DNA of 64,000 nt from positions 400,606-464,605 of the IMG/VR virus record IMGVR_UViG_3300023174_000033. One strand, given 5' to 3'. Shown piece by piece: positions 11,985-37,877 of this stretch; position 1 is the stretch's first letter; each line of letters opens with the position of its first letter. Made by a program: the position numbers and the translations under genes. The notes beneath the pieces are model-generated. The model saw nothing but the letters and a program-made list of their open reading frames with translations, made no database searches and had not been told where the DNA came from.

Positions 11985-12430
11985 TTAAGTTTAGCTTCTT
12001 TTTTTAAAAGATTTAATAAACAATCAAACCCATCACATTCATAATATTCTTCATAACCTTCAAAATATCCTTCATCACTATCCCAATTATCTTGATAAAA
12101 ACTTACTAAAAACCATTCATCTTTACATTTTTGGACATGAACTTCAAATGGATATGGATTGCCTTCATCATAAGTTGGTAGATAAAAAGTTAAATAAGTA
12201 AGACCAATTCTGTAATAATCAACTTTTTCACTTAATCCAAGATTATCCCATTCTTCTTCTTCCATATGGCAACGGTCACTATCTTCCATTAAATTAACAA
12301 GGGTTTCCATTTCAGATTTACTGAAAAACTCCTTACCCAAAGATTTTAAAAGTCTTGACCATTCACTATTGGTGATTTTTTTTGGTTCAGCAGCTCCAAA
12401 TATGCTTTCAAATCTTTTTAAGTATTTCAT
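11981..12430 (-). CDS. MKYLK-tag, YxCD-family protein
   Basis: MKYLKRFESIFGAAEPK...EWFLV...YYECDGFDCL. Confidence 0.85.
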   Translation of the reverse strand: MKYLKRFESIFGAAEPKKITNSEWSRLLKSLGKEFFSKSEMETLVNLMEDSDRCHMEEEEWDNLGLSEKVDYYRIGLTYLTFYLPTYDEGNPYPFEVHVQKCKDEWFLVSFYQDNWDSDEGYFEGYEEYYECDGFDCLLNLLKKEAKLK

Positions 12431-12864
12431 AGGTTTAAAAGTTCTTCTAATTTTTCTATTAAGTCTTCAAATGTGCTACATTCGAACTTTCTAACAACCT
12501 CATCACCACCTTTTTCATCAAATTCAGCATAACCCAAATAAAACCAATCAGGATCATCCACCTTATCCCTTTTTGAAATTTCAATTGCTTTTACAATATA
12601 TTTCCCCCTTGGGTAGTTACTGGTTTTCTCTACTTTTCTAAAATCATTAATAGTATAATGGGTCTTATCATAATTTAATTCCAATAACCTATCATATTCT
12701 AAACTCAATTCATACCTTCTTATAAAATCAGACATCTGTTCTATTTCAGAAGTGGTGAATTCTGATAAAGTAACTGACCTTGAATTCACCCTTCTCCACC
12801 AATCATCGAAGTCGAGTTCAGTTGAACCAGAATAAAAGTTTTCAAATCTTTTTAAGTATTTCAT
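12427..12864 (-). CDS. MKYLK-tag, YxCD-family protein
   Basis: MKYLKRFENF...DWFYL...FECSTFEDL. Confidence 0.85.
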   Translation of the reverse strand: MKYLKRFENFYSGSTELDFDDWWRRVNSRSVTLSEFTTSEIEQMSDFIRRYELSLEYDRLLELNYDKTHYTINDFRKVEKTSNYPRGKYIVKAIEISKRDKVDDPDWFYLGYAEFDEKGGDEVVRKFECSTFEDLIEKLEELLNL

Positions 12865-12867
12865 AGT

Positions 12868-13293
12868 TTATTGTATTTTTAATAAGTTCAAAACAGAATC
12901 AAACCCATCACATTCATAATATTCTTCATACTCATAGTAAACTTCCCCTTCTTCATCTTGATACTCATCTTGATAAAAACTAACCATAAACCATTCATCT
13001 GGACACTTTTGTATATGAACCTCTATTGGTAGAGGATTAACATCACCACCTCCAATATAATAAGTTAGATAAGTAAGACCAATAACAAAATTATCTAACT
13101 TTTCACTCCAACCAAGATTATCCCATACTACTTGTTCTCGACCACTACTTTCCATTAAGTCAATCAAAGTTTTATGCTCTGATTTGGTAAAGAAATCTTT
13201 TCCAGATTTAATTTTAATTGACCATTGACGTTCACTTATCTGTTTAGCTTCAGCAGGTCCAAACATAGATTCAAATAATTTCAGATATTTCAT
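12868..13293 (-). CDS. MKYLK-tag, YxCD-family protein (close paralog of 11981..12430)
   Basis: Start reassigned to MKYLKLFES at 13293. AATATATA at 13305-13298. Confidence 0.85.
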   Translation of the reverse strand: MKYLKLFESMFGPAEAKQISERQWSIKIKSGKDFFTKSEHKTLIDLMESSGREQVVWDNLGWSEKLDNFVIGLTYLTYYIGGGDVNPLPIEVHIQKCPDEWFMVSFYQDEYQDEEGEVYYEYEEYYECDGFDSVLNLLKIQ

Positions 13294-23717: not shown

Positions 23718-23936
23718 ATGATTGGATTTGTTAGTTACCCAACACCAAATAAAACCTATAAACATTACAAGGGAGGTTTGTATAAAGTTCTTTTTTTATC
23801 CAAACATACCGAAACGGATGAAATATTAGTAAATTACCAATCAATTCTTTTTGGTTCTTATTATTCAAGACCACTAGAATCTTGGAATTCTACAACAGAA
23901 AGAGGTGAACCACGTTTTAAAGAAGTTATACAATGA
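23718..23936 (+). CDS. DUF1653-family protein
   Basis: YKHYKGGLYKV...HTETDEILV.Y...SRPL. Confidence 0.85.
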   Translation: MIGFVSYPTPNKTYKHYKGGLYKVLFLSKHTETDEILVNYQSILFGSYYSRPLESWNSTTERGEPRFKEVIQ

Positions 23937-24367
23937 TTAAGGAAAAAGAATTTATCCTGAATAAAATAAAAATTGAAGGTGATGCAAAAGAATGGAACTA
24001 TACTTGTAAAAATGGTATAGAATTCAAATGTTATATTCGTAGAGTTCCAAGAAGCGGACACCTTTGTGGTTATGTGCACCTAACACCTGATAACGATTAC
24101 TTTGGTTATGAATATGATCATATACCAGTAGATTGCCATGGTGGATTGACCTATAGTTCTGACCATGATGGTGAGTGGGTTATTGGATTTGATTGTGCTC
24201 ACTTTGGTGATAATAAACCATTTTATTCCGATATGGAAATCTATGGGAATGATGGTACTTATAGAGATATGGAATATCTTACTAAAGAATGTGAATCTAT
24301 TTGTGAACAATTATCAACTAAAAGTAAATCACATTATAGAACAAAAAAATTAAATGAAATATTATGA
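23933..24367 (+). CDS. Conserved phage hypothetical protein with C-terminal tag
   Basis: GHLCGYV, CHGGLTY, IGFDCAH. Ends RTKKLNEIL. Confidence 0.8.
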   Translation: MIKEKEFILNKIKIEGDAKEWNYTCKNGIEFKCYIRRVPRSGHLCGYVHLTPDNDYFGYEYDHIPVDCHGGLTYSSDHDGEWVIGFDCAHFGDNKPFYSDMEIYGNDGTYRDMEYLTKECESICEQLSTKSKSHYRTKKLNEIL

Positions 24368-26587: not shown

Positions 26588-26661
26588 AGACAGGTGGCGC
26601 AATCGGTGAGCGCAGGACTCTTATACGGTCAAGGTTGTGGGTTCAAGTCCCATCCTGTCAA
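26588..26661 (+). tRNA. tRNA-Ile(UAU)
   Basis: D arm GCGC/GCGC, anticodon loop CT-TAT-AC, T arm GTGGG-TTCAAGT-CCCAT. The 1:72 pair is an A:A mismatch. No encoded CCA. Confidence 0.8.
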
Positions 26662-26718
26662 CAAATAAAATCTGTAAACAAAGAGGGCTAATAATATAAA
26701 ATATTAAGATATATAAAA

Positions 26719-26792
26719 GGGCTCTTAACTCAGTAGGTCAGAGTGTCGGTCTCATAAACCGGAAGTCGTTGGTTCAAACCCAACAGGGCCCA
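26719..26792 (+). tRNA. tRNA with CAU anticodon (Met or lysidine-type Ile2)
   Basis: Acceptor GGGCTCT/AGGGCCC, loop CT-CAT-AA, T arm GTTGG-TTCAAAC-CCAAC. No encoded CCA. Confidence 0.9.
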
Positions 26793-26825
26793 CACTTTTT
26801 TATTAAAAAAAACTAATTAACTAAC

Positions 26826-27068
26826 TTGTTCAAGAGTTCAGACTATTTCAACGTCGTATGTATCGAAAATTGTAAATCTACCAAAGAATTCTGGCCAATA
26901 ACAATTGGTAAGCATTATCAAATCAAAAGTGGTTGGAAAACTTCAAATATTGCCTTCTATAACATAATAGCTGATGATGGAAAAGAATGGATAATACCAT
27001 CTACTTTTTTCAAATATGTAGATGAAGTAAGAGAGATAAAGATAGAGGAAATCCTTACTGTAAATTAA
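26826..27068 (+). CDS. Small VCI-family protein with C-terminal tag
   Basis: VVCIEN...TIGKHY...ADDG...FKYVDEVREIKIEEIL. Confidence 0.8.
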   Translation: MFKSSDYFNVVCIENCKSTKEFWPITIGKHYQIKSGWKTSNIAFYNIIADDGKEWIIPSTFFKYVDEVREIKIEEILTVN

Positions 27069-27796
27069 CCAGCTTTCCTCCTGCCAAGTGAATCTATACT
27101 CCCATCATGCTTGAACTCACTAACCATTCCAGAAAGATAAATAGTTCCAAAATGGTAATCATCTTTCGGGTCAAATAAATAGTAATCATAACCCGTGAAT
27201 ATCTTATTATAGTCACTCATAAGTGTTCTCCACTCATTAGTTCTTCTTCCCACCGCCCATATATTCTTCGAATTTTTATAGTCATTGATGGGTACACTTA
27301 ACAAATCATAATTATTTCCCTGTTTATATGGACTTGACTGTAACCAATCCTCAAATCCATCCCAACCATCAACTAACCACCAGTCTTTGACAAAATAAAT
27401 ATCTTTGGTTCCTTTCAAAGTAAGGTGACTTGCATCTACTGGTAGTTCAGTTTGAATTAAAAAATAATCATCTTGGTATTTAGCTAGACTCATATCTTTC
27501 CTAAATCCATTTGGAATTTCAACTTTCCAATTTACTTGATTGATTTTTCCTGAAGTACCAGTTGCTGGATAGAGTGATCGACTAACAAGTTGTAGACCAG
27601 TTAGTTCTGGTTTTAAATATTTAGTAAATAACTTTTCAATTTGTAATAAATCACTTGAATTTAGTTCTTCTGTGCCCGGACTCTTTTCCATATCGAAGAA
27701 AAGGTCATTGAAAAGGTCTTGACCTAAATTTACATAGGTTGAACTTTTCAAATACTTTTCGTGTCTTGACTCATTGAATTTCCTTAAATATCTCAT
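27065..27796 (-). CDS. MKYL-tag, YxCD-family-like protein
   Basis: MRYLRKFNE...DYFLI...WLVDGWDGF. AATATATA at 27812-27805. Confidence 0.8.
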   Translation of the reverse strand: MRYLRKFNESRHEKYLKSSTYVNLGQDLFNDLFFDMEKSPGTEELNSSDLLQIEKLFTKYLKPELTGLQLVSRSLYPATGTSGKINQVNWKVEIPNGFRKDMSLAKYQDDYFLIQTELPVDASHLTLKGTKDIYFVKDWWLVDGWDGFEDWLQSSPYKQGNNYDLLSVPINDYKNSKNIWAVGRRTNEWRTLMSDYNKIFTGYDYYLFDPKDDYHFGTIYLSGMVSEFKHDGSIDSLGRRKAG

Positions 27797-27814: not shown

Positions 27815-28036
27815 CTATCCGAGCAATATATTCAATTTATCATTTCTATGTTCATTTAAACGCTTGAACATTTTTATAGGATAGTGTCCCATTCTATCAT
27901 AGTCATTTACAACCCAACACAAATCAATATCATTAGTCAAAGTTAGATCGTATACTTTACCTATTACGAATGGACCTTCAATTATGGAATCCTCCCAATA
28001 GGTATTGTCTATACAGACTGCTTTTATTTTTTCCAT
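27815..28036 (-). CDS. Small VCI-family protein with C-terminal tag
   Basis: AVCIDN...IGKVY...FKRLNEHRNDKLNILL. Confidence 0.8.
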   Translation of the reverse strand: MEKIKAVCIDNTYWEDSIIEGPFVIGKVYDLTLTNDIDLCWVVNDYDRMGHYPIKMFKRLNEHRNDKLNILLG

Positions 28037-28037
28037 A

Positions 28038-28361
28038 TTAAAGAGTTTTAATCCATTCTATAAGTAGTAATGATACTTTATATCCACAGAATGCTCCAAG
28101 TGCGGATGGAATTGGAAATACAATTAATTTACCTAAATCAGTAACATATTTAGGTCTATTAACAATTTTCCCCATAAAAAAGTAATAAGCTAAATAACCA
28201 AGTAAAACAGCAATATCTGTTTTAGTAGCTATAAAAACCACAAGAGTTGCACCAATAAAACCAAAAGTAAAGTTATCTCTTACACCCTCCCATACTTCAT
28301 ATGGTGTTGCTTCATTAATTTCTTTAATTATCTTCTTATGTAGTTCTTTAGTCTTTCTCAT
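28038..28361 (-). CDS. Membrane protein
   Basis: Three hydrophobic segments. Start at the ATGA overlap with the methyltransferase stop. Confidence 0.75.
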   Translation of the reverse strand: MRKTKELHKKIIKEINEATPYEVWEGVRDNFTFGFIGATLVVFIATKTDIAVLLGYLAYYFFMGKIVNRPKYVTDLGKLIVFPIPSALGAFCGYKVSLLLIEWIKTL

Positions 28362-29107
28362 TTTTGTTTTTTCCATTCTTCAAAGTGATCGATTTGTGGT
28401 TGTGATAATTCAGATCCTATATAACTCATTCCCCTTTCAATACAAGCTTTAGCAGTAGTTCCAATTCCCATAAAACTATCATATACAAGTGAGTTGGGTT
28501 TAGCATAAATATCCATTAACTTAGTAATAAGTTCAGTAGAAAAAGTAGCTTTGTTTAGGGGATTAGAACCATCATTATTTCTAGCTTCAATAAAGTTATA
28601 GATATTCTCATAGTTAGCTTGCCCAGTTCTTTCAATTCTACCAGTTATTTTCTTATTAGCATCAAAGGTTTTGAATTCATTTTTCCTAGAAAAGACAAAG
28701 ATATATTCAACTATTCTTGTAAGTTTATTCTTACTCACATTATTTGGAATAGCATTTGATTTTTTCCAAACGATACAATCTGCTGTAATAAAGTTAGTTC
28801 TTCTAATAATATCAGCGATAACTAACCAAATTAAATGTGTTTTCTCACTTGAATAAGACATATTGTAAAGAACACAACCATTTGGTTTTAATATTTTATC
28901 ATAACCATTAAAGACATCACAAGTCCAGTCAATATATTCTTGGTCTGTTTTGAAGTCTTGGAATATGTCATACCTACTGGAATATTTATCTGCTGCGCCA
29001 ACTCTGGATGTATTATATGGTGGTGATGTAATGACCATATCAACCTGTCCTTGAAGTTCAGGTCTATTCATTGTATCAAAGCAGGATTCGTTATAAATTA
29101 TATTCAT
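28358..29107 (-). CDS. DNA amino-methyltransferase (N4-C/N6-A, beta class)
   Basis: ITSPPY motif IV near the N-terminus, DSFMGIGTT motif I near the C-terminus. Confidence 0.9.
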   Translation of the reverse strand: MNIIYNESCFDTMNRPELQGQVDMVITSPPYNTSRVGAADKYSSRYDIFQDFKTDQEYIDWTCDVFNGYDKILKPNGCVLYNMSYSSEKTHLIWLVIADIIRRTNFITADCIVWKKSNAIPNNVSKNKLTRIVEYIFVFSRKNEFKTFDANKKITGRIERTGQANYENIYNFIEARNNDGSNPLNKATFSTELITKLMDIYAKPNSLVYDSFMGIGTTAKACIERGMSYIGSELSQPQIDHFEEWKKQK

Positions 29108-29493
29108 TTTAGTAGTTGTTCTATTCTTTGGTTTCTTTTTTCTTGTGGTTTTAAAACTGGATTATACTTGAAGTATCTATCAAACTTTAGTAACCAATAT
29201 AGTGAATAAGGGTCAAAGTAAGTGATTAAGTTTCTATTCAAATAAACATTTTTTTGTAGCTCATAATGTCCATTTCTCCATCTATAAAACTTTCCTGTTA
29301 TGTATAGGTTTTCATCTTCAGTTATTGTATTTCCATCAACACTTTCCCAAAGGTAAAACTTTTTATTAGGAAGGTCGTCATATACCTTTTTATAGTATTT
29401 CCATTTATTAAAGTTAGTCATAATAGAAGCAAACACAAATGGAATGAAACTAGCAATGACTACAACAAAAATATTAAAATGTAATGTAATCAT
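29104..29493 (-). CDS. Membrane-anchored hypothetical protein with C-terminal tag
   Basis: N-terminal TM. Ends KRNQRIEQLLK. Confidence 0.75.
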   Translation of the reverse strand: MITLHFNIFVVVIASFIPFVFASIMTNFNKWKYYKKVYDDLPNKKFYLWESVDGNTITEDENLYITGKFYRWRNGHYELQKNVYLNRNLITYFDPYSLYWLLKFDRYFKYNPVLKPQEKRNQRIEQLLK

Positions 29494-29496
29494 TTT

Positions 29497-29817
29497 TTAG
29501 ATAAGGTCTTTATCCTTTAGACGTTTTAGATAGGAAGTAGCACCAGTATCGCCAGACATATACCATTCAAGTTCTTTTGCTCTGAATGCGCAGTTGTTTA
29601 GGTCTTTGATTAGTTTATGAACTTCATTTAAGATAAGTTCTCTTTCTTCTGGTGTTGCGTCACCAATTCTATCATACTCTACCATAGGTCTTTTACCAAA
29701 ACCATTGTGGGTATAATCCTCACCTTCATATTTGCCATCATTAACAAACATATTTTCAATTTCATCAGCCAACATTTGGACTTTGAAATAACCATAATCA
29801 AATGAACCTCCCGACAT
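29497..29817 (-). CDS. Conserved phage hypothetical protein
   Basis: MSGGSFDY...LEWYMSGDTG. TATCTTTG at 29843-29836. Confidence 0.8.
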   Translation of the reverse strand: MSGGSFDYGYFKVQMLADEIENMFVNDGKYEGEDYTHNGFGKRPMVEYDRIGDATPEERELILNEVHKLIKDLNNCAFRAKELEWYMSGDTGATSYLKRLKDKDLI

Positions 29818-29854
29818 AACTTTTATATTTTTTTACAAAGATAAGGGATTAAGT

Positions 29855-30070
29855 TTAATTCTCCAAAATCTTTTGTAAAAAGTATTCTCTAATGATTGAC
29901 TTATCCCAAAAATATTTAGCTGGTATATCTACTCGTCTCCCAAGATTATCAATGGTTAAATAAAGAACACCATGTTCCATTTTTACTTCAACCAATTCAT
30001 ATTCATCACCTAACTTTATATTAGCGTGATTTGCTGGTGAATAGTGTTCCTTAATACATTTGATTATCAT
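29855..30070 (-). CDS. Small VCI-family protein with C-terminal tag
   Basis: IKCIKE...LGDEY...IREYFLQKILE. Confidence 0.75.
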   Translation of the reverse strand: MIIKCIKEHYSPANHANIKLGDEYELVEVKMEHGVLYLTIDNLGRRVDIPAKYFWDKSIIREYFLQKILEN

Positions 30071-30390
30071 AGGTTTAATATCTCATCTATATCATCATCC
30101 CGTTTTTGTTCTTTGGATGGTAGTGCCACATCTACTAAATATACTTTGAAGTTAAGGATTTCTTCTTGGATACTACCATCTTTCATATCATAAAACTCTT
30201 TATAAACAAACTTACCTTGGTAATCATTTGGATATTTACTATTATCTGGCACAAAATCAACAAACTCACCCCTTTGTCTTGGTACACCGCAATAATCATC
30301 AAGATATTCTCTGATGTATTTGAGGGTTGGACCAACACAGATTGGTGTACCATCTTGTAATACCACATGGGAAAATTTTACTACTTTCAT
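30067..30390 (-). CDS. Hypothetical protein with C-terminal tag
   Basis: Ends KRDDDIDEILNL. ATG 4 nt after TATCTTTG at 30402-30395. Confidence 0.75.
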   Translation of the reverse strand: MKVVKFSHVVLQDGTPICVGPTLKYIREYLDDYCGVPRQRGEFVDFVPDNSKYPNDYQGKFVYKEFYDMKDGSIQEEILNFKVYLVDVALPSKEQKRDDDIDEILNL

Positions 30391-30391
30391 T

Positions 30392-30667
30392 TTACAAAGA
30401 TAATATATTTTCTATTTTTTCCTCTCTAATTTCTTCAATTGTTTTGAACTCTGAAATAGGGTAGTAGTATTTGGTTGTTCCCTTATCAGATTTTTCAATC
30501 AAATAATATCTTTTATCATCGTTTATTTTGGATGAAATATGACTACCAAACCAAACATAAGGATTTGTGTAAGGAGCCAAGGTATCTTCTCTTGGTAAGG
30601 CATTATACACTTTACCATCAGTTAATTCATCCCACTCAACATCAGTTTTGATTTTAATAACTTTCAT
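30392..30667 (-). CDS. Small VCI-family protein with C-terminal tag
   Basis: LTDGKVY...FKTIEEIREEKIENIL. Confidence 0.8.
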   Translation of the reverse strand: MKVIKIKTDVEWDELTDGKVYNALPREDTLAPYTNPYVWFGSHISSKINDDKRYYLIEKSDKGTTKYYYPISEFKTIEEIREEKIENILSL

Positions 30668-30903
30668 TCTAATATTTTTTCTATTTGTTTTTCTCTGAAT
30701 TCTATTATATCAATAAAGTATTCGTCAAATGTTATTTTACCAATAGAAAATCTATGTCTGCCAGTATTCACATCATATAGTTCAACTTTTACAGGTGGTC
30801 CAAATCCTTCATTACCATCATAGTTTAGGAAATAAGTAAAAGTATCTCCCTTTTCTACTGGTGTTTCTTTCATTGGTGATTTAATGCAAATACATTTATT
30901 CAT
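30664..30903 (-). CDS. Small VCI-family protein with C-terminal tag
   Basis: CICIKS...FIDIIEFREKQIEKILE. Confidence 0.8.
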   Translation of the reverse strand: MNKCICIKSPMKETPVEKGDTFTYFLNYDGNEGFGPPVKVELYDVNTGRHRFSIGKITFDEYFIDIIEFREKQIEKILE

Positions 30904-31130
30904 TTTAATATTTCATCTAATTGTTGTTGTCTCCATTTAGTTACTTCTACCATCTTAAACCTATCAGTATTAAGCATCCATTCACTAAATTGTTTTACTT
31001 TTAATTTATCATTTTTGGAAAAATAATTACCACTAACAAAAAGAACATTATATATTTTACCAGGTGTGAAATAGTGACACCTTGAATATTCATATGGGTC
31101 GTTTTTAATACAGATATATTTTAGGTTCAT
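30900..31130 (-). CDS. Small VCI-family protein with C-terminal tag
   Basis: YICIKN...FTPGKIY...WRQQQLDEILK. Confidence 0.8.
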   Translation of the reverse strand: MNLKYICIKNDPYEYSRCHYFTPGKIYNVLFVSGNYFSKNDKLKVKQFSEWMLNTDRFKMVEVTKWRQQQLDEILK

Positions 31131-31372
31131 TTTAATAGTTCATCTATTTGTTTTTCTCTGTATTCTTCTATAAAATCAAAATCTTCTATTGGCCAATAGG
31201 AAAACTGGTCTCTATCATCTTCAACAATATAAGACATAATAACTTTATCTTTACCCGCTAAATAAATGTATTGACCTGAACCATATAAAGGTAGTGCTTC
31301 ATATATTTTTCCATAAGTCAATCTTTCCCAGAAAGGTTCATTACCTGGTTTTCTTTTATACCTCAACTTCAT
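31127..31372 (-). CDS. Small VCI-family protein with C-terminal tag
   Basis: LTYGKIY...EEYREKQIDELLK. Confidence 0.8.
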   Translation of the reverse strand: MKLRYKRKPGNEPFWERLTYGKIYEALPLYGSGQYIYLAGKDKVIMSYIVEDDRDQFSYWPIEDFDFIEEYREKQIDELLK

Positions 31373-31620
31373 TTTAATAGTTCATCTATTTGTTTTTGTC
31401 TAAAATCTTGTATATCCTCAAAATGACTTTTGAAATGTTTTTCTATTAGACCAAAGTCATACATACCATCTTTAACATCATAAAGATGAAAAGTTATTTG
31501 GCGATTTCCAAGTGTATCACCAATTTTATCTACTTCATACCAGAACTTATCACCCTTTCTAACAGGTGTTCTTTTTCCTAAAAATTTCCTATCTTTTATA
31601 CACACACAATAATTTCTCAT
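31369..31620 (-). CDS. Small VCI-family protein with C-terminal tag
   Basis: CVCIKD...QDFRQKQIDELLK. Confidence 0.8.
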   Translation of the reverse strand: MRNYCVCIKDRKFLGKRTPVRKGDKFWYEVDKIGDTLGNRQITFHLYDVKDGMYDFGLIEKHFKSHFEDIQDFRQKQIDELLK

Positions 31621-31973
31621 TCTAAAATCTTTTTTATTTTTATTTCTCTAATTGTTTCTTTACTGGCATACCTTTCTATAATAGATTTTTTTGGGTTGAA
31701 AGTCATAGGAGTAACTTGAAAACAAGATGGTTCAGATAGTAATTGGTCTATGGTTTCTTGTCTATATTCGTCAAGTGGTTTGAAATGTTCCAAAAAAATA
31801 TCTGATGGAAGTCCAAGTATATAACGCAACCCACTCACATGGTGGTCTGATTTTTGATAAAGGTTCCATTGTAGTTCTTTTTTCATAGGTGGTAAAACCA
31901 AAAAAACATCACCTATTTTTGGTTTATGTTGAGTATAATACTGCCTATTTTTTATACAAATGTATTGTGTCAT
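31617..31973 (-). CDS. Small VCI-family protein carrying two copies of the C-terminal tag
   Basis: FKPLDEYRQETIDQLL, then IREIKIKKILE. Confidence 0.8.
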   Translation of the reverse strand: MTQYICIKNRQYYTQHKPKIGDVFLVLPPMKKELQWNLYQKSDHHVSGLRYILGLPSDIFLEHFKPLDEYRQETIDQLLSEPSCFQVTPMTFNPKKSIIERYASKETIREIKIKKILE

Positions 31974-32200
31974 TCTAAAAACTTTTCTATTTGTTCTTGT
32001 CTAAATTCATCAATCAATTTGAAATAATATTCTGGTACTACAATTGGGTGTCCTGTATCCGCAGTGACACCATATTGACTATCAAAATGAAAACTCCCAT
32101 AATGTTTAACTTCATAAACCTTTCCAATAGTTAGTATTGCATTTCTACCATTTTTTTGTGGAGTATCCCAGTTTTTATTTCTTATACAAATTGCTTTCAT
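31970..32200 (-). CDS. Small VCI-family protein with C-terminal tag
   Basis: AICIRN...LTIGKVY...DEFRQEQIEKFLE. Confidence 0.8.
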   Translation of the reverse strand: MKAICIRNKNWDTPQKNGRNAILTIGKVYEVKHYGSFHFDSQYGVTADTGHPIVVPEYYFKLIDEFRQEQIEKFLE

Positions 32201-32400
32201 TTAAGTAACTCTTCTAATCTTATATTTCTCAATTCTGTAAGTGGTGTGAACATTTTTTCAATATAATGTTCTTTGGCTCCACCATCATCAACAATATAAA
32301 TCCATACTACACTATTCCTATGGACTTCATAAATCTTACCTGGTGTGATATTAAATTGGATACCATTGGGTGTGATATTGGTTTTACAAACTACTTTCAT
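32197..32400 (-). CDS. Small VCI-family protein with C-terminal tag
   Basis: VVCKTN...ITPGKIY...VDDGG...ELRNIRLEELLK. Confidence 0.8.
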   Translation of the reverse strand: MKVVCKTNITPNGIQFNITPGKIYEVHRNSVVWIYIVDDGGAKEHYIEKMFTPLTELRNIRLEELLK

Positions 32401-32612
32401 TTTCCTAAAATATCATCAATGTTTTTATCCCTTTTATCAGCCTCATAGTTTTCCATAAAGTATTTTATCTGCTCTACTATATTCTTATCATTTTTTTCAT
32501 TATTTTTAATCCTATCTTGTAGAGCAAAAAGTAAGGAATGTATTTGCTCCTTGAAATCTTCTTTTACAAAGAGTTTTTCCAACTTTTCTCTGAATTCTGG
32601 GTCCAAGTTCAT
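32397..32612 (-). CDS. Small helical protein with C-terminal tag
   Basis: Ends KRDKNIDDILGK. Confidence 0.75.
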   Translation of the reverse strand: MNLDPEFREKLEKLFVKEDFKEQIHSLLFALQDRIKNNEKNDKNIVEQIKYFMENYEADKRDKNIDDILGK

Positions 32613-32839
32613 TTTAGTAGTTCTTCTAGTTTTTCTAATCTAACTTCATCAAGGGGTTTAAACCTACCTCTTCTTAAAGCAACCTCAATCCCATCATTAC
32701 CTATTATATAATATACACCATTATCATTAAATGTTGAATTCAGCCTATCTGTAACTTGGTAGATTTTACCAGAAGTCACAAAATCCATACCCAATGCCTC
32801 ATTAGTAACACCAGTATCATCTATACACACAACTTTCAT
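32609..32839 (-). CDS. Small VCI-family protein with C-terminal tag
   Basis: VVCIDD...VTSGKIY...FKPLDEVRLEKLEELLK. Confidence 0.8.
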   Translation of the reverse strand: MKVVCIDDTGVTNEALGMDFVTSGKIYQVTDRLNSTFNDNGVYYIIGNDGIEVALRRGRFKPLDEVRLEKLEELLK

Positions 32840-33045
32840 TTTATTAATTGATTTATCTTATCTTGTCTTATTGATTGGAGTGGTTTAAACATATATTCTG
32901 TATATTCACTATATTTGATTTTATATCCTTTATCATCTATGATATATTTAGCAAAGAAATAGTCATGAGGTGCTGTTATTACTTCATAGATTTTACCTTC
33001 AGTAAAATTAAATATTTTGGTATTTATATTACAAACTATTTTCAT
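32836..33045 (-). CDS. Small VCI-family protein with C-terminal tag
   Basis: IVCNIN...FTEGKIY...IDDKG...SIRQDKINQLIK. Confidence 0.8.
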   Translation of the reverse strand: MKIVCNINTKIFNFTEGKIYEVITAPHDYFFAKYIIDDKGYKIKYSEYTEYMFKPLQSIRQDKINQLIK

Positions 33046-33269
33046 TTTAATAATTCGTCTAACTTTTCTTGTCTATATTGTTCTAACTCAATAAATCTCC
33101 TTTTTGATAAAATCACTATTTTTCCACTATCATCATACAACTTATATGATTGTTCAGAACCATCATCAATTAACTCATATACTCTACCCAAAGTTAAAAA
33201 GATTTCTATTTTATCTGGGTTTTTACCCATCTTAGGAAAGGGATAATCATCTATACATACTACTTTCAT
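33042..33269 (-). CDS. Small VCI-family protein with C-terminal tag
   Basis: Start MKVVCIDD (33269, ATGA overlap). Ends QYRQEKLDELLK. Confidence 0.8.
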   Translation of the reverse strand: MKVVCIDDYPFPKMGKNPDKIEIFLTLGRVYELIDDGSEQSYKLYDDSGKIVILSKRRFIELEQYRQEKLDELLK

Positions 33270-33481
33270 AACAAAGTTTTTTCTAATTGCATTTCTCTCC
33301 ATTCATCCAAAGATACAAATGATTTTGGACTTGTATAAATTGTTTCTCCAATATCATTTGTTATTTTCATAGCCAGTTTATCCTTGTTGGATTTCCAAAT
33401 AGGGTTCCAAGAGTCAAGTGCTTCATATTGTTTCCCATATGTAAGATTGGGACAATTTTCTTTGATAAAAATAACTTTCAT
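33266..33481 (-). CDS. Small VCI-family protein with C-terminal tag
   Basis: LTYGKQY...TNDIG...DEWREMQLEKTLL. Confidence 0.8.
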   Translation of the reverse strand: MKVIFIKENCPNLTYGKQYEALDSWNPIWKSNKDKLAMKITNDIGETIYTSPKSFVSLDEWREMQLEKTLL

Positions 33482-33720
33482 TTTAATAATTCGTCTAACT
33501 TTTCTAATCTAACTTCATCAAGTGGTTTGAACCTGTCCATCCTTAGTGATACTTCTTTACCATTATCACTGATAATATTTACCATATGAATACCTGATGG
33601 TTTATGTATACCACCTTTATTTGGATGGGAAATCATTTCATATACTTTTCCCTCTGTAATATGTTCATGTGGGGAAACCCCACCTTCTCTGATTTTATTG
33701 TTTATACAAACTAGTTTCAT
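33478..33720 (-). CDS. Small VCI-family protein with C-terminal tag
   Basis: LVCINN...ITEGKVY...FKPLDEVRLEKLDELLK. Confidence 0.8.
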   Translation of the reverse strand: MKLVCINNKIREGGVSPHEHITEGKVYEMISHPNKGGIHKPSGIHMVNIISDNGKEVSLRMDRFKPLDEVRLEKLDELLK

Positions 33721-34043
33721 AGGATTTCTTCTATTTTTTTATTCCTAACTTCTTGGATGTTTTCACTATCAACCCATTTATTAAAATCTTCAACTGCGTT
33801 TTCTGAAGCATGTTGGTGGTAATACTCTTGATGTTTCACAAGTGATGGGTCAAGAGTTCCACCTTTCCCATCTGAATATGGAATAGGAACTGGACTTACT
33901 TTATCTTGGATAAGACCAGGATAATGTTTTGTATATCCACAAGGTTTGCAAATAAAACGAATGCATCTATCATAAGAATCGTCTTTGATTTTTCCACCAC
34001 ATTTTGGGCAAGGTTTTAAGTATTGTTCGCTATAACTTCCCAT
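33717..34043 (-). CDS. Zn-ribbon protein (Lar-like CPKCGG...CKPC) with C-terminal tag
   Basis: LKPCPKCGG, CKPCG. Ends VRNKKIEEIL. ATG 4 nt after TATTTTTG at 34055-34048. Confidence 0.8.
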   Translation of the reverse strand: MGSYSEQYLKPCPKCGGKIKDDSYDRCIRFICKPCGYTKHYPGLIQDKVSPVPIPYSDGKGGTLDPSLVKHQEYYHQHASENAVEDFNKWVDSENIQEVRNKKIEEIL

Positions 34044-34047
34044 ACCA

Positions 34048-34062
34048 CAAAAATAATATATA
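34048..34062. promoter_or_regulatory. Back-to-back promoters: TATTTTTG (minus) and AATATATA (plus)
   Basis: The motifs occupy 34055-34048 and 34055-34062 in a 23-nt divergent gap. Confidence 0.6.
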
Positions 34063-34066
34063 ATCT

Positions 34067-34438
34067 ATGAAATACCTAAAAATATTTGAAAGTTTTAATC
34101 AAGGGAAATATTATTGGCCAATAACTGCAACTGAGTTCAATAAGTATGTAGAAACATTTGAATTTACAGAACAAGAAATTGAAGCAATAAAAAGTATCTG
34201 TGATAAAAGATTTACTGAAATGGATTTTGAATTTTATACAAGCTGGGATATACCACCAACTGGTTCAATAAATTTGGAGACAAATACAGGTGGTCAAAAC
34301 TTATATACTATAAGAACAAGAATAGACAAAGAAAATGACGAATATTTCGCAGTCGCATATAATATTGATAGGACACCAGAATATTACAAAGCAGACCAAT
34401 TGGAGGGTCTAATAAAACTTTTGGAAGATATCTTATGA
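34067..34438 (+). CDS. MKYLK-tag, YxCD-family protein
   Basis: MKYLKIFESF...EYFAV...YYKADQLEGLIKLL. Confidence 0.85.
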   Translation: MKYLKIFESFNQGKYYWPITATEFNKYVETFEFTEQEIEAIKSICDKRFTEMDFEFYTSWDIPPTGSINLETNTGGQNLYTIRTRIDKENDEYFAVAYNIDRTPEYYKADQLEGLIKLLEDIL

Positions 34439-34881
34439 AATACCTAAAAATATTTGAAGAGTTTTCTGATTTCTATAAAAAAATACGAAATGACGATATC
34501 AATCCTAAAAAAATCATTGATATTGATTTAGGTATACAGAATATGATAGAATCAAGATTAAAGCACAAATCTACTTTTTCATATTCCATATACCAACCAT
34601 ACATGGGTAGTATGTTGAGAGGAAATCAAAGGAAATTAAAGATTGAAACAGATATAATCGTTACACATGGTTCTCCAGATAAAATGGTAAAACCCTTAAT
34701 CAAAAAACACAATACTATGATTGTTGAGATGGAAGATGAGTGGTTTATAGTTTCTAACCAGACAAGATTTGATGGTGGTGGTTCTTGGGCTACTCCAAAG
34801 TCATTGGATATTGAATTATATGAATGTGACCAAGAAGAAGGACTTTTGGAGTTATTAAAGAAATTAGATATAATAAAATGA
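34435..34881 (+). CDS. MKYLK-tag, YxCD-family protein
   Basis: MKYLKIFEEF...EWFIV...LYECDQEEGLLELL. Confidence 0.85.
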   Translation: MKYLKIFEEFSDFYKKIRNDDINPKKIIDIDLGIQNMIESRLKHKSTFSYSIYQPYMGSMLRGNQRKLKIETDIIVTHGSPDKMVKPLIKKHNTMIVEMEDEWFIVSNQTRFDGGGSWATPKSLDIELYECDQEEGLLELLKKLDIIK

Positions 34882-35312
34882 AATACCTAAAAATATTTGA
34901 AGGTAGTGAAAGTTTTTTTGGAACCTCCAACTATGGTGATTTTGAAATAAATAAACCCGCCCATAAAGTCATATTCAATATGTTCATATGTGATTATGAA
35001 TCACCAAATTGGAAAGAAAATGTTGAAATCCTAAAAGGTATAAACTTCCCAACAAGTATAGAAAAATCAAAAGGTTATCATAAAGGTTTATCTATTCAAG
35101 TTTTACTTGATATGGACATCCAATCAGCAAAAGAGTTCTCTGATGAAATCGTCAATATGTTTTTAGATAAACCACTTATCGTTATTGCTGAGGTAGATGT
35201 AATAATGAAAAAACAACCAATAGGTTATTACTTTGATAAAGACCTATGGGAACCTGGTAGATATTTTGATAAACTAATTGAAAGTGGTGAAAAAGGAGTA
35301 TTTATACATTAA
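34878..35312 (+). CDS. MKYLK-tag protein with an unrelated body
   Basis: MKYLKIFEG start, no YxCD motif. Confidence 0.8.
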   Translation: MKYLKIFEGSESFFGTSNYGDFEINKPAHKVIFNMFICDYESPNWKENVEILKGINFPTSIEKSKGYHKGLSIQVLLDMDIQSAKEFSDEIVNMFLDKPLIVIAEVDVIMKKQPIGYYFDKDLWEPGRYFDKLIESGEKGVFIH

Positions 35313-35754
35313 TTCTATCAATAATTTTTGGTCTTAGAAATGTTTTGATGCTTTTTTCATTTTGTTCTAATATATTTGGTATTGCTGCCATTGAATTATG
35401 ATGTAATCCACGAGCAGGATTTGGATTTATCATTTCAAATGGTCCAATATATCTTTCAAAGTTTTCTAACATTTTAGAAAATATTAAACGATGATCTGAT
35501 GCAAGATACATAATCTGTGGGTAAACATCCCCAAAATGACCCCATTTTACAGTATACATCCTTATATGATTTTTATCCATTGAATTTGGTTCAAAGTGCC
35601 TTCTTGGTCTGAATCCAATAAATCTATTCCATTTTTCTTTGATATAGTTTGGGTCATTAACAAAGACAAGGTTGTCAGTCCACTTTTACATGAGGAAAGT
35701 TATTAAATATAAATTGACTATTCTATTATAGTCAGGATCATTTTTATAAATCAT
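35302..35754 (-). pseudogene. Possible interrupted gene (single in-frame TAA at 35688-35686)
   Basis: ATG 35754 is in frame with track ORF 35302..35580 apart from one stop codon. Confidence 0.45.
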
Positions 35755-35917
35755 CTTCTTTTAGTATTTCATCAATTTTAATTTCTCTATTAACCCACTT
35801 TGGTCTTTTCATATAATCTGGCAAATGTTCCCAATTTTTCTGATGATGTTTAATCATCCACTCATGATATTCCTGGGCGACTTTATCTGGTTTTGTTCCA
35901 ATTTGTTTTTCATTCAT
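35744..35917 (-). CDS. Small protein (57 aa) with C-terminal tag
   Basis: MNEKQIG...VNREIKIDEILKEDDL. ATGA overlap with the upstream gene. Below the track cut-off. Confidence 0.75.
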   Translation of the reverse strand: MNEKQIGTKPDKVAQEYHEWMIKHHQKNWEHLPDYMKRPKWVNREIKIDEILKEDDL

Positions 35918-36114
35918 GATATAATTCTGTCTATTTTTTGATTTCTAAATTCTTCCAATGTAACAAAAAATCTTTTATCCCAGTTAAAAATATCTACCAT
36001 TTTATCACTTTCTCTCTGAACCATATAAAACCCTTTGAAGTCACTTAAAACATTATAAACATTTCCATATTGTAAATAAATGTGATTATCAACTATACAA
36101 ACTACTTGTTTCAT
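35914..36114 (-). CDS. Small VCI-family protein with C-terminal tag
   Basis: VVCIVD...LQYGNVY...EEFRNQKIDRII. Confidence 0.8.
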   Translation of the reverse strand: MKQVVCIVDNHIYLQYGNVYNVLSDFKGFYMVQRESDKMVDIFNWDKRFFVTLEEFRNQKIDRIIS

Positions 36115-36368
36115 TTTAATATTTGCTCTATTTGTTCGTCTCTATATTCTTCTATTGGTTTGAAAAAGTCAAAATGTATATGGATATTTTTCCCATGATC
36201 ATCAATTACTCTACACTTCTTAGGAAGTATCTTTGGTGCAAATTCATAGAGTTCATAGATTTCGTAAACTTTACCAATAGTCAAGTCGTGTTTTCTAAAC
36301 TTCTTCTCACCATTGAAAGATGTGGCTGGATGAATTGTTTGGGTATTTTCTATACAGATAGCTTTCAT
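36111..36368 (-). CDS. Small VCI-family protein with C-terminal tag
   Basis: AICIEN...LTIGKVY...IDDHG...EEYRDEQIEQILK. Confidence 0.8.
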   Translation of the reverse strand: MKAICIENTQTIHPATSFNGEKKFRKHDLTIGKVYEIYELYEFAPKILPKKCRVIDDHGKNIHIHFDFFKPIEEYRDEQIEQILK

Positions 36369-36371
36369 TTT

Positions 36372-36710
36372 TCAAATAGATAATTCTTTTAACTTTTCTT
36401 CTCTAATAGTTCTAGTTCTGAAAGACTCATAACTTTCTTCTTTATTTATGGTAAGTTTTGGTGAATAAATCGCATCCCAATCATCATCAAAGTAATCATC
36501 TAACATCTTAAATAAATCTTTTGCTTTTATTCTTTTCAATGAAAAGGTCCACTCTCTATTATTGGTATGAAAAATCTCACCATCATTTCTTGTAACGACA
36601 ATTCTAAGTCCTGCGTAATTAAAAACCACCCTAAAGTTAGGTGCGATTAATTTACCTGTTTTAACAAAACCCAAGTATTCGAGTATTTCAGTTAATTGGT
36701 CTATTGTCAT
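36372..36710 (-). CDS. Hypothetical protein with C-terminal tag
   Basis: Ends TIREEKLKELSI. Confidence 0.75.
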   Translation of the reverse strand: MTIDQLTEILEYLGFVKTGKLIAPNFRVVFNYAGLRIVVTRNDGEIFHTNNREWTFSLKRIKAKDLFKMLDDYFDDDWDAIYSPKLTINKEESYESFRTRTIREEKLKELSI

Positions 36711-36907
36711 TTTACTATTTCTTCTATTTTATCATTTCTATTATCTTCAATGGATTCGAATATTTCTTTTGGATACCAACCACCTTGATTTAGATCATCT
36801 TTGTAAACCCAATGTCCATCATCTCTACTGGTAGAAGGCACCAATCTATAGTATTTTCCTTCAGTCAAATATCTTATACTTTTGATACATTTGAGTTTTA
36901 TATCCAT
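36707..36907 (-). CDS. Small VCI-family protein with C-terminal tag
   Basis: Start MDIKLKCIK (36907), 4 nt after TATATTTG at 36919-36912. Ends NRNDKIEEIVK. Confidence 0.8.
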   Translation of the reverse strand: MDIKLKCIKSIRYLTEGKYYRLVPSTSRDDGHWVYKDDLNQGGWYPKEIFESIEDNRNDKIEEIVK

Positions 36908-36977: not shown

Positions 36978-37877
36978 ATGAAGAAATTAAAGACTTTCGA
37001 ACAATTCAAAGAAAAAAATGTCCAAGAAGGCATAAAGGATTATTTATTAGGTGGTTTAGCCACAATAGGTAGTATGGTTACTACACCAGAAACCTCTTAT
37101 GGACAACAAAAAACCCCAAAAGAAGTTACTTCGCAACAAGTCAGTGATAAAAAGGACATACTGGGTAGACCATTAACAGCAGCACCCCCCACAAAAACTG
37201 AGAATCTTGGAAAGCGTAAGTATTTAGTAACCACTAAACAAATAAACCCAAGTCCACAAAAGGATGCTGAATTAAAAGCTAAGGGGTATAAACCAGTTTG
37301 GACTGAGACTGTAAAGTCTACACCAAAATGGGGAGTTGAGAGTTCTGAAAGAAAAAAGCCAGTTGTAATGAAATCGGATAATGATAAGTTCTTTGAACTC
37401 GGTGGATATACTTTAACACAACAAGTAAAAGATACAATACAAGCAAGGATTAATAAATTGGGTGGTGTTGATAGTGTGAAAGTTGAAGCTTCTACTGATA
37501 AAACTCCATTGACTAAGAAACTAAAAGCTGATTTAGAATCAAAAGGTTATTCGGGTGATAACACTGGACTTTCAAAAGCTAGGTCAAATGCTATTAAAAA
37601 CTTTTTGATTAGTATTGGTGTAAATCCATCAAATATCGTTGAAGTTAATTTGGCCGACCAAGGTAAAGAGGGTGGTTATGACCCAAGTGCTAGATATGTA
37701 AAACTTACTCTAATTGAAAAAGGTAGTGGTACTGGTAGTGGTGAAGAATATTTCCAAGAAAAGGAAGAAATAGTTGTTTACTATCAAAGAGTAAATGATA
37801 TGATGCAGAAAATGGTCAAACAAAGATATGGTACACCTATCGATTGTGAAGGTGGTAACTGTGCCACTTATGATTGA
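36978..37877 (+). CDS. OmpA-like peptidoglycan-binding-domain protein with N-terminal tag
   Basis: FFELGGYTL...VKVEASTD...NTGLSKARSNAIKNFL...ARYV. Starts MKKLKTFEQF. Confidence 0.75.
   Translation: MKKLKTFEQFKEKNVQEGIKDYLLGGLATIGSMVTTPETSYGQQKTPKEVTSQQVSDKKDILGRPLTAAPPTKTENLGKRKYLVTTKQINPSPQKDAELKAKGYKPVWTETVKSTPKWGVESSERKKPVVMKSDNDKFFELGGYTLTQQVKDTIQARINKLGGVDSVKVEASTDKTPLTKKLKADLESKGYSGDNTGLSKARSNAIKNFLISIGVNPSNIVEVNLADQGKEGGYDPSARYVKLTLIEKGSGTGSGEEYFQEKEEIVVYYQRVNDMMQKMVKQRYGTPIDCEGGNCATYD

What the first reader, a model, noticed from the sequence alone, without database searches (positions are those of the whole stretch)
27815..36907. Tandem array of ~19 hypervariable small beta-domain paralogs with recombination-like junction repeats
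Seen: 65-120-aa genes with M-K-x-(V/I)-C-I...(L/F/I)-T-x-G-K-x-Y-x-V...(D/N)-D-x-G...F-x-x-(L/I)-x-E-x-R, chained almost entirely by 4-bp ATGA overlaps. Junction DNA is repeated exactly: 30 nt at 33040-33069 = 33476-33505 and 30 nt at 31126-31155 = 31368-31397, each spanning tag, stop and next start, while gene interiors are very divergent. Inference: an SH3-like scaffold expanded as a gene accordion, where the conserved tag/stop/start junction lets cassettes be gained, lost or shuffled, as expected for an arms-race binder repertoire.
Basis: partly seen in the sequence, partly recalled or inferred. Interest (0 to 1): 0.68.

Follow-up and report, generated by a model that had tools for sequence, protein, structure and literature searches.

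The report
Tagged mini-gene cassettes, huge phage
A 465-kb phage carries a chain of about 25 tiny genes, most encoding an SH3-like barrel, that all end in the same short helix; related phages gain or lose whole genes at the DNA coding that helix, and the same tail sits on 42 to 143 unrelated reading frames in this phage lineage, which hints at an unknown protein-addressing system.

Summary
Window 27815-36907 (minus strand) holds 18 HMM-supported paralogues, with a 19th at 26826-27068(+). Nineteen of 28 junctions are ATGA overlaps, and both 30-nt exact repeats are real. AlphaFold (pLDDT 92) gives a five-strand SH3-like barrel plus a C-terminal helix, with variation concentrated in two loops.

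Five independent metagenomic haplotypes keep the cassette order but differ by whole cassettes. Indel ends fall at the junctions (74% within 45 nt of a stop codon, against 21% at random). Shuffling, recent amplification ("accordion") and pervasive positive selection are not supported: paralogues share a median 29% identity and orthologue dN/dS has a median of 0.27.

The main new point is that the "tag" (R-x-x-K-[IL]-[DE]-x-[IL]-L) is not specific to this family. It ends 42 ORFs genome-wide (about 2.6 expected) and 143 in the 642-kb phage LR756502.1 (about 7 expected), on unrelated bodies. It is absent from two control phages and from distant homologues. Codon patterns show constraint at the peptide level. 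Its function is unknown; my best guess is a shared docking helix.

The parts
36707..36907 (-). SH3-like + tag cassette (66 aa)
   Evidence: HMM E 4e-19; orthologues of 66 aa at 92-94% identity in L001 and L004
36372..36710 (-). Non-family cassette (112 aa) with a degenerate tag
   Evidence: No Pfam or PHROG hit; 85-87% orthologues in L001, L004 and L006
36111..36368 (-). SH3-like + tag cassette (85 aa, long loop 1)
   Evidence: HMM E 3e-25; many metagenomic orthologues
35914..36114 (-). SH3-like + tag cassette (66 aa)
   Evidence: HMM E 4e-19
35744..35917 (-). Small tagged gene (57 aa) with another body; present in L009, absent in L001 and L004
35303..35754 (-). Orthologue of a 150-aa gene, interrupted here by an in-frame stop (open part 35302-35580)
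34067..35312 (+). Three plus-strand genes that share the N-terminal M-K-Y-L-K-I-F-E motif and interrupt the array
   Evidence: (family D7)
33717..34043 (-). Zn-ribbon protein (weak Lar-like hit) carrying the tag; first gene of the main chain
   Evidence: Pfam PF14354 E 0.016, below cut-off; tag; absent in L004 and L006
33478..33720 (-). SH3-like + tag cassette (80 aa)
   Evidence: HMM E 2e-25
33266..33481 (-). SH3-like + tag cassette (71 aa); absent in L006
33042..33269 (-). SH3-like + tag cassette (75 aa); absent in L006
33476..33505 (.). Exact 30-nt junction repeat, copy A (its partner is 33040-33069). The pair flanks the 436-bp two-cassette segment that L006 lacks
33040..33069 (.). Exact 30-nt junction repeat, copy B
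32836..33045 (-). SH3-like + tag cassette (69 aa); a 92.5% DNA copy lies at genome 6581-6794 on the other strand
32609..32839 (-). SH3-like + tag cassette (76 aa)
   Evidence: HMM E 6e-24; 95% orthologue in L001
32397..32612 (-). Tagged cassette with a different body and no family hit (71 aa); absent in L001
32197..32400 (-). SH3-like + tag cassette (67 aa); this is the member that was modelled
   Evidence: AF2 pLDDT 92, strands 2-5, 23-25, 33-37, 43-47, 51-53, helix 54-66
31970..32200 (-). SH3-like + tag cassette (76 aa)
   Evidence: HMM E 9e-27
31617..31973 (-). SH3-like cassette with an internal tag, fused to a short extension that ends in a second tag (118 aa)
31369..31620 (-). SH3-like + tag cassette (83 aa)
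31127..31372 (-). SH3-like + tag cassette (81 aa); absent in L001 and L004, present in L009
31368..31397 (.). Exact 30-nt junction repeat, copy A (its partner is 31126-31155). The pair flanks the 242-bp cassette that L004 lacks
31126..31155 (.). Exact 30-nt junction repeat, copy B
30900..31130 (-). SH3-like + tag cassette (76 aa); absent in L001
30664..30903 (-). SH3-like + tag cassette (79 aa); 100% aa identity in L001, absent in L004
30392..30667 (-). SH3-like + tag cassette (91 aa, long loop 2)
   Evidence: phrog_6261 E 1e-5
30067..30390 (-). Tagged gene (107 aa) with another body
29855..30070 (-). SH3-like + tag cassette (71 aa)
29104..29493 (-). Tagged protein with a hydrophobic N-terminus (129 aa)
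28358..29107 (-). N6/N4 DNA methyltransferase, the conserved downstream anchor of the array in all relatives
   Evidence: phrog_67 E 1e-38; PF01555 in the loci
27815..28036 (-). Outlying SH3-like + tag cassette (73 aa)
   Evidence: HMM E 5e-23
26826..27068 (+). Outlying SH3-like + tag cassette on the other strand (80 aa)
   Evidence: HMM E 3e-27

Best explanation
This is a hyperplastic accessory region of an uncultured 465-kb T4-type 'Mahaphage'-clade phage, probably with a Bacteroidota host. It is built from translationally coupled mini-cassettes. Each cassette has two parts. The first is a small body, usually a five-strand SH3-like barrel whose two long loops carry nearly all of the length and sequence variation. 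The second is a 12-14-residue C-terminal amphipathic helix, E-x-R-x-x-K-[IL]-[DE]-x-[IL]-L-K, followed by ATGA.

SHOWN: the tag-coding DNA plus the stop/start overlap forms a 30-57-nt direct repeat at each seam. Relatives differ by whole cassettes whose ends lie in that repeat, so every gain or loss is in frame and recreates an intact tag and an intact start.

INFERRED: the events arise by homologous recombination between seams, either unequal exchange within a genome or exchange between co-infecting relatives.

SHOWN: the tag is a portable, lineage-specific peptide module. It sits on unrelated bodies genome-wide, forms its own terminal helix in two different bodies, and is constrained at the amino-acid level with an extra bias towards A at third codon positions.

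INFERRED, weakly: the tag is a common docking or address helix that ties many small accessory proteins to one shared partner or destination, and the barrels are variable-loop binders used in host takeover or counter-defence. The A-rich, unstructured tag-coding RNA probably also serves as the Shine-Dalgarno-less initiation region of the next cassette.
For: Genome context: G000 is a viral record of 464.6 kb, 98% complete. TerL is 63% identical to the 634-642-kb phages LR756502 and LR745206, which belong to the Mahaphage clade with predicted Bacteroidetes hosts (PMC7162821). The major capsid protein is gp23-like.

Fold: pLDDT 92, barrel plus helix 54-66. SH3 domains fill the PDB hit lists at TM about 0.6 and Z about 6. 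Phage proteins match in BFVD and the Atlas at TM up to 0.85. Insertions are concentrated after residues 12 and 28, with 41 and 97 inserted residues.

Cassette polymorphism: the maps of five haplotypes from separate samples are collinear but differ in content, and L001=L002=L003 and L009=L010 replicate across assemblies. Of 268 indel ends, 74% lie within 45 nt of a stop codon against 21% at random, with a typical pattern of 0/-33. Recombinant junctions are visible in alignments A3 and A4. The last 36 nt of an orthologue diverge more than its body when the downstream neighbour differs (-0.039 against +0.019, p = 3e-4). One cassette has been copied exactly from border to border to another locus.

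Tag: 42 ORFs against 2.6 expected in G000; 143 against 6.9 in LR756502.1; 8 against 5 in LR756501.1; 1 against 2 in PTm1. Tagged bodies include DUF1281_C, phrog_2164/MazG-like and a Zn ribbon. phrog_2164 relatives at about 45% identity or more mostly carry the tag (67 of the 120 listed), while the more distant homologues listed below them end before it. The tag forms a separate helix, 132-143, in that body. Codon information is 0.74/1.40/0.55 for positions 1/2/3. Several synonymous codons are used per position, but A3 is 0.54 against 0.335 in the bodies. Junction RNA is unstructured, mean z +0.25. Upstream regions genome-wide are A-rich and G-poor with no SD. Orthologue dN/dS has a median of 0.27, so these are real, constrained genes.
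Against: No partner, destination or activity is known for the tag or the barrel; nothing here tests binding. No tagged protein lies in the capsid module. Haplotype pairs share ancestry, so the breakpoint statistics overcount events. BLAST segments extend into any shared tag, which by itself pulls apparent breakpoints towards junctions. The direction of each event (gain or loss) is unknown. Expression timing was not measured, because reads could not be obtained. The A3 bias shows that some of the conservation is at the nucleotide level.
Confidence: 0.6

Rival explanations
1. The junction is conserved for RNA or translation reasons only. On this view it is an A-rich, unstructured re-initiation region for the next ATGA-coupled gene in a host that lacks Shine-Dalgarno pairing, and the peptide motif is a by-product.
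For: A3 is 0.54 in tags against 0.335 in the bodies of the same genes. 57% of tagged G000 ORFs end in ATGA against 9% of all ORFs. Junction RNA is unstructured. Upstream regions are A-rich genome-wide.
Against: Conservation is three-periodic, with codon position 2 highest. The invariant Arg uses AGA, AGG, CGA, CGT and CGC at background ratios. Hydrophobic positions keep a helical spacing. 73% of tagged ORFs in LR756502.1 do not end in ATGA. The motif is kept across phages with 63% TerL identity, with changed residues at the end (ILK against LGI). It folds as a confident helix in two different bodies.
Confidence: 0.15
2. The tag is a virion- or compartment-targeting signal. It would be the C-terminal counterpart of the T4 capsid-targeting sequence or of encapsulin and microcompartment cargo peptides, so that the array is a repertoire of packaged or injected small proteins.
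For: The tag sits at a fixed position at the extreme C-terminus, most often core plus one residue. It is portable across unrelated bodies. The phage has a T4-type head. In T4, a 10-residue terminal peptide targets diverse, poorly conserved internal proteins into the head (PMC9026906).
Against: There are no virion proteomics. No tagged protein lies next to the capsid genes. 143 different cargo species would be unprecedented. This is a special case of the docking-helix idea, not a separate line of evidence.
Confidence: 0.15
3. The array is a classical gene accordion: recent tandem amplification of one binder gene under selection, followed by divergence.
For: The genes are tandem, in the same orientation and from the same family. 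L009 has two adjacent copies of one cassette type. T4 is known to amplify genes by recombination at short homologies (PMC9391042).
Against: Paralogues share a median 29% aa identity and at most 44% between array members. Each cassette type has its own 84-100% orthologue in other haplotypes. dN/dS is mostly below 1.
Confidence: 0.05
4. Cassettes move by a site-specific system, either integron-like attC sites or PeSL-like stem-loop cassettes.
For: Promoterless cassettes in the same orientation carry a conserved element at the 3' end. One cassette has been copied exactly from border to border to another locus.
Against: The junctions have no hairpin potential (mean z +0.25, MFE -1 to -12 kcal/mol per 70 nt). 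No RNA family is found there. No integrase was seen in the window ORFs that were scanned. Breakpoint overlaps of 33-57 nt fit homologous exchange.
Confidence: 0.05

Closest known systems
PeSL-mediated modular shuffling in the hyperplastic regions of T4-type phages (Arbiol et al. 2010, PMC2839356; Comeau et al. 2014, PMC4122927)
   Same: This is a T4-type phage with blocks of small non-essential ORFan genes. Close relatives differ by insertion, deletion and replacement of whole genes, and the events are bounded by a short repeated element at gene borders.
   Different: PeSLs are non-coding promoter-plus-terminator stem-loops. Here the repeat is coding (a C-terminal peptide plus an overlapping stop/start), has no stem-loop, and the genes are translationally chained rather than separately transcribed.
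T4 internal-protein genes with the capsid-targeting sequence (review PMC9026906)
   Same: A short terminal peptide is shared by otherwise unrelated, poorly conserved small proteins of a T4-type phage, and the locus is variable among relatives.
   Different: The CTS is N-terminal, is cleaved by gp21 and has proven function. The tag here is C-terminal, its function is unknown, and it is about ten times more numerous. A separate N-terminal motif in this genome looks more like a CTS.
Recombination-driven amplification and deletion in T4 (tifA; PMC9391042) and poxvirus gene accordions (from my own knowledge)
   Same: Recombination between short direct homologies changes the gene content of accessory regions.
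   Different: Those events produce near-identical copies within a few generations. Here the copies are ancient paralogues and the polymorphism is presence or absence of distinct cassettes.
Small SH3-like phage proteins: YorP of SPbeta (PDB 2heq), phrog_4927, phrog_6261, Olleya phage Harreka_1 'putative early protein', DUF6501
   Same: They share the small five-strand barrel, and these are the best structural or weak profile matches.
   Different: None has a known function. Sequence similarity is marginal (E 1e-5 to 1e-6 at best), and whether they carry the tag was not examined.
Integron cassette arrays
   Same: They are dense, same-orientation, promoterless cassettes with a recombination element at each 3' end.
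   Different: Here there is no integrase and no attC-like folded site, and the element lies inside the coding sequence.

Membership tests
SH3-like small beta-barrel fold | Five antiparallel strands forming a barrel, with RT-like and n-Src-like loops | tested here: met
   AF2 pLDDT 92. The top 50 Foldseek and VIA hits are mostly SH3 domains, at TM 0.5-0.6 and Z 5-6.3. These scores are middling, so this shows a shared fold, not homology to eukaryotic SH3.
SH3-like small beta-barrel fold | All array members share the fold | tested here: met
   Eighteen members match one HMM at E 1e-11 to 1e-27, with conserved core residues C5, I6, G21, Y24, F51. Only one member was modelled.
PeSL-type modular shuffling | Indels between close relatives are bounded by a repeated border element | tested here: met
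PeSL-type modular shuffling | The border element is an intergenic early promoter plus a terminator stem-loop | tested here: not met
   The seams are coding and overlap by 4 bp, with no stable hairpin.
Gene accordion | Recent tandem amplification giving near-identical copies of variable number | tested here: not met
   Median paralogue identity is 29% and the maximum is 44% between array members.
Gene accordion | Positive selection on the amplified gene | tested here: inconclusive
   Pairwise dN/dS has a median of 0.27. Three cassette types approach or exceed 1, but only at dS of about 0.03-0.06. No site-model test was run.
Integron cassette array | An integrase and attC sites that fold as imperfect hairpins | tested here: not met
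   No hairpin signal, and no integrase among the scanned neighbours (only part of the window was scanned).
Terminal targeting peptide (T4 CTS-like or cargo-loading peptide) | A short terminal motif shared by unrelated proteins and portable between bodies | tested here: met
Terminal targeting peptide (T4 CTS-like or cargo-loading peptide) | The motif is necessary and sufficient to deliver cargo to a defined destination | not testable with these tools
   This needs virion proteomics or fusion experiments.
Lar-like restriction alleviation (gene 33717-34043) | A match to PF14354 above its cut-off | tested here: not met
   15.8 bits against a cut-off of 28.6. Only the Zn-ribbon part matches.

The most novel reading that the evidence does not exclude
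A subclade of the largest known phages (G000 and LR756502.1) labels roughly a tenth or more of its proteome with one of two lineage-specific terminal peptides, and no reading frame was found to carry both. One is the C-terminal helix R-[DN]-x-K-[IL]-x-x-[IL]-[LG]. The other is the N-terminal motif M-K-[YH]-L-K-x-F-E-x-F. They would act as address labels for an unrecognised phage protein-sorting or assembly system, for example loading into the giant head or docking on a common hub. Because the C-terminal label is encoded at every cassette seam, recombination can plug any new small gene into that system in frame.
Probability: 0.3. Interest if true: 0.88.

Novelty: new variant of a known kind. 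Interest (0 to 1): 0.72.

Why it matters
Huge phages encode hundreds of small proteins that nobody can yet classify. A short terminal motif shared by 42-143 reading frames gives a handle for sorting them into a functional class and for fishing out the partner with a single bait. It also shows a compact way for a phage to keep an exchangeable gene repertoire. One 30-57-nt coding seam supplies the protein's C-terminal module, the stop codon, the next start codon and the recombination homology, so gene gain and loss never breaks a reading frame. If the tag is a targeting signal, it could be used to load cargo into large capsids, as the T4 CTS is.

Tried and rejected
- Pfam and PHROG scans of 20 array or tagged proteins gave no family above cut-off for the barrel or the tag.
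- Megablast of the region and tblastn of one member against 50,697 phage records found no match.
Contigs were reached through the look-up of encoding contigs instead.
Population reads and expression were therefore not examined, and I did not try another route.
- The PF03420 (T4 prohead protease) search was uninformative, because its controls were silent too.
- The 293-aa protein that carries a family domain at its C-terminus (genome 343113-343994) has no recognisable partner domain.
- The sequence TTATCTTTGTAAA at the two non-overlapping seams is not enriched in the window.
- A search for a tagged scaffold-like protein near the capsid genes found none.
- Complex prediction was not run, because I make no claim that two specific proteins bind. 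The 1.84-billion-protein profile search was not run either, because the word search already gave 226 relatives and that library carries no names.
- Literature searches found no description of the tag.

Full report
**What the window is.** The window is the last 64 kb of a single 464,605-bp viral record (G000:C1:400606-464605). It has 32% GC and 7 tRNAs, and CheckV rates it 98% complete. Its large terminase is 63% identical to the uncultured 642-kb and 635-kb phages LR756502.1 and LR745206.1. It is 40-42% identical to the 636-735-kb phages and 33% identical to Tenacibaculum phage PTm1. Those giant genomes form the 'Mahaphage' clade, with predicted Bacteroidetes hosts (PMC7162821). The genome has a gp23-type capsid gene. 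The window also holds a collagen-like tail fibre, ThyA, FolD and a DNA methyltransferase. Both contig ends lie in one 36-nt-period collagen-like repeat, so the contig probably broke inside a repeat of a circular or permuted genome.

**Checking the observation.** The ORF list shows the minus-strand chain as described.
- An HMM built from 18 members retrieves all of them at E 1e-11 to 1e-27. It also finds one member at 26826-27068(+), a second mini-array at genome 6572-7292, and a few scattered copies. In total there are 25-26 in the genome.
- Nineteen of 28 successive junctions are ATGA overlaps, including 15 of 16 in the main run 34043-29855.
- The two 30-nt exact repeats are correct.
- The array is not pure. 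Six genes with other bodies also carry the tag. These include a Zn-ribbon protein and one with a hydrophobic N-terminus. A plus-strand trio and a methyltransferase interrupt the array.

**Fold.** I modelled 32197-32400 with a 68-sequence alignment.
- The model has pLDDT 92 and consists of five strands plus a helix at residues 54-66.
- Foldseek and VIA-align lists are almost entirely SH3 domains (TM 0.5-0.6, Z 5-6.3). YorP of SPbeta is among them. These scores are middling, so they support a shared fold and nothing more.
- BFVD and the ESM Atlas give uncharacterised phage proteins, among them an Olleya phage 'putative early protein', at TM up to 0.85.
- Among the 18 paralogues the framework residues are conserved: C5, I6, G21, K22, Y24, D39, F51.
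- Length variation sits after residues 12 and 28, which are the two long loops, with 41 and 97 inserted residues.

**Comparison with relatives.** A word search with the family profile gave 226 unnamed metagenomic proteins. From these I fetched syntenic contigs from separate samples and assemblers: L001=L002=L003, L004, L006 and L009=L010~L011. I clustered genes at 55% identity or more and wrote each locus as a string of cassette types.
- The order is collinear in all five haplotypes, apart from one possible local swap.
- The content differs by whole cassettes. Taking the stretch from the Zn-ribbon gene or its positional equivalent to the methyltransferase:
  - Window: 10 11 12 13 14 15 16 17 18 19 20 21 22 23 24 25 26 27 28 29
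  - L001: 10 15 17 18 75 19 50 20 23 24 70 78 80 25 73 27 28
  - L004: 81 16 66 17 18 20 22 82 83 70 25 26 27 84 29
- Neighbouring cassettes show very different identity to the same relative, for example 100% next to 60%. The region is therefore a mosaic.

**Where the breakpoints are.**
- In pairwise BLASTN chains, 74% of 268 indel ends lie within 45 nt of a stop codon, with a median distance of 11 nt. For random positions the figure is 21% and the median is 112 nt.
- The recurring pattern is that one segment ends at the stop codon and the next begins 33-57 nt before a stop codon. The tag-coding stretch is therefore shared by both flanks.
The second flanks the 242-bp cassette that L004 lacks.
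- In both cases the relative's junction matches the window's left seam upstream of the repeat and the right seam downstream of it.
- The last 36 nt of an orthologue are less conserved than its body when the downstream neighbour differs, and slightly more conserved when it is the same (-0.039 against +0.019, Mann-Whitney p = 3e-4, pairs not independent).
- One cassette (32832-33045) has a 92.5% DNA copy, cut exactly at its borders, at genome 6581-6794 on the other strand.
- The seams have no hairpin potential (mean z +0.25), and no Rfam family is found there.
- T4-type phages are known to recombine at short homologies (PMC9391042) and at repeated border elements (PMC2839356).

**What is not supported.**
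- Paralogues are old. The median identity is 29%. The highest between array members is 44%. The 91% pair is the distal copy. This is not a recent amplification.
- Orthologous cassettes have a median pairwise dN/dS of 0.27, and 4.5% of pairs exceed 1, all at very low divergence. The genes are real and constrained, and I see no general arms-race signature.

**The tag is a genome-wide module.**
- A loose pattern for the tag, required within the last 15 residues, hits 42 ORFs in G000 (2.6 expected from internal matches) and 143 in LR756502.1 (6.9 expected).
- It hits only 8 (5 expected) in the 735-kb LR756501.1 and 1 (2 expected) in PTm1, which has the same base composition.
- In LR756502.1 the ending is often L-G-I instead of I-L-K.
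- Tagged bodies include DUF1281_C (7985-8470), phrog_2164/MazG-like (23933-24367) and a Zn ribbon.
- For phrog_2164, 67 of the 120 listed relatives carry the tag. Almost all of those are the relatives at about 45% identity or more, from this phage lineage. The distant ones shown (Burkholderia, Ralstonia and other phages) stop just before it.
- In the model of that protein the tag is a separate terminal helix, residues 132-143, after a short break.

**Peptide or nucleotide constraint.**
- Information content in the tag codons is 0.74, 1.40 and 0.55 for positions 1, 2 and 3.
- The invariant Arg uses five codons at background ratios.
- Third positions are nonetheless A-rich: 0.54 against 0.335 in the bodies of the same genes.
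- Upstream regions of long genes are A-rich and G-poor with no Shine-Dalgarno signal.
- I conclude that the tag is a peptide-level motif whose coding RNA is also shaped as the initiation region of the next gene.

**Interpretation.** Seam-mediated, in-frame cassette gain and loss is well supported, at about 0.8. The portable peptide tag is shown. Its role as a shared docking or address helix, and the barrels as variable-loop binders of an early host-takeover region, are inferences at about 0.3-0.4. The closest known system is PeSL-mediated shuffling in T4 hyperplastic regions. It differs because the seam here is coding and unstructured. The T4 capsid-targeting sequence (PMC9026906) is the nearest precedent for a terminal peptide shared by diverse small phage proteins.

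**Limits.** Reads could not be obtained, so there are no data on within-population variation or on expression. Breakpoint counts include non-independent haplotype pairs. Only two proteins were modelled. No binding was tested.

Noticed in passing
window 11110-13293(-), 27065-27796(-), 34067-35312(+), 36978-37877(+); genome-wide: A second lineage-specific terminal motif, N-terminal M-K-[YH]-[LI]-K-x-[FY]-[EN]-x-F, starts 29 ORFs in G000 (0.24 expected) and 59 in LR756502.1 (0.8 expected). It starts none in LR756501.1 or PTm1, and never occurs on a protein with the C-terminal tag. From memory it resembles the T4 capsid-targeting sequence, which ends in hydrophobic-x-E.
   Followed up: partly
window 63414-64000 and genome 1-212: Both contig ends lie in the same 36-nt-period collagen-like repeat (86-98% identical copies). 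The 'linear' record therefore probably broke in a repeat of a circular or permuted genome.
   Followed up: partly
window 32832-33045 and genome 6581-6794: A single cassette is duplicated at 92.5% DNA identity, cut exactly at the cassette borders, on the opposite strand. The copy heads a second three-gene ATGA-chained mini-array at genome 6572-7292.
   Followed up: yes
window 35303-35754(-): The orthologue of a 150-aa gene that is intact in L001, L004 and L009 carries an in-frame stop here, which leaves a 92-aa ORF at 35302-35580.
   Followed up: partly
window 26588-26662 and 26719-26793 (+): tRNA-Ile(TAT) and a CAT-anticodon tRNA sit beside the array. Ile codons in the tag are mostly ATA and the invariant Arg is mostly AGA, and the genome also encodes tRNA-Arg(TCT).
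   Followed up: no
window 31617-31973(-): This 118-aa gene has an internal tag after its barrel and a second tag at its end, as if two cassettes were fused by loss of a stop codon. The 92% orthologue in L001 is likewise about 119-125 aa.
   Followed up: no
window 29832-29844(-) and 30391-30403(-): The sequence TTATCTTTGTAAA occurs exactly at two of the non-overlapping seams of the chain. It contains TAnnTTTG, which from memory is the Bacteroidota -7 promoter box. It is not enriched window-wide.
   Followed up: partly
L001 7836-9061, L009 5200-6424: Relatives carry two DUF2589 genes and other genes between cassette 4 and the 150-aa gene, where the window has only the 57-aa tagged gene. L004 has a 149-aa gene inserted between cassettes 2 and 3.
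   Followed up: no
LR756502.1 2-20 kb (+) and 585-641 kb (-): Most of the 143 tagged ORFs cluster in two blocks that diverge across the coordinate origin of that genome, which the original paper reports as circular. In G000 most tagged genes likewise lie near the two contig ends, at 1.9-7.3 kb (+) and about 404-453 kb.
   Followed up: no
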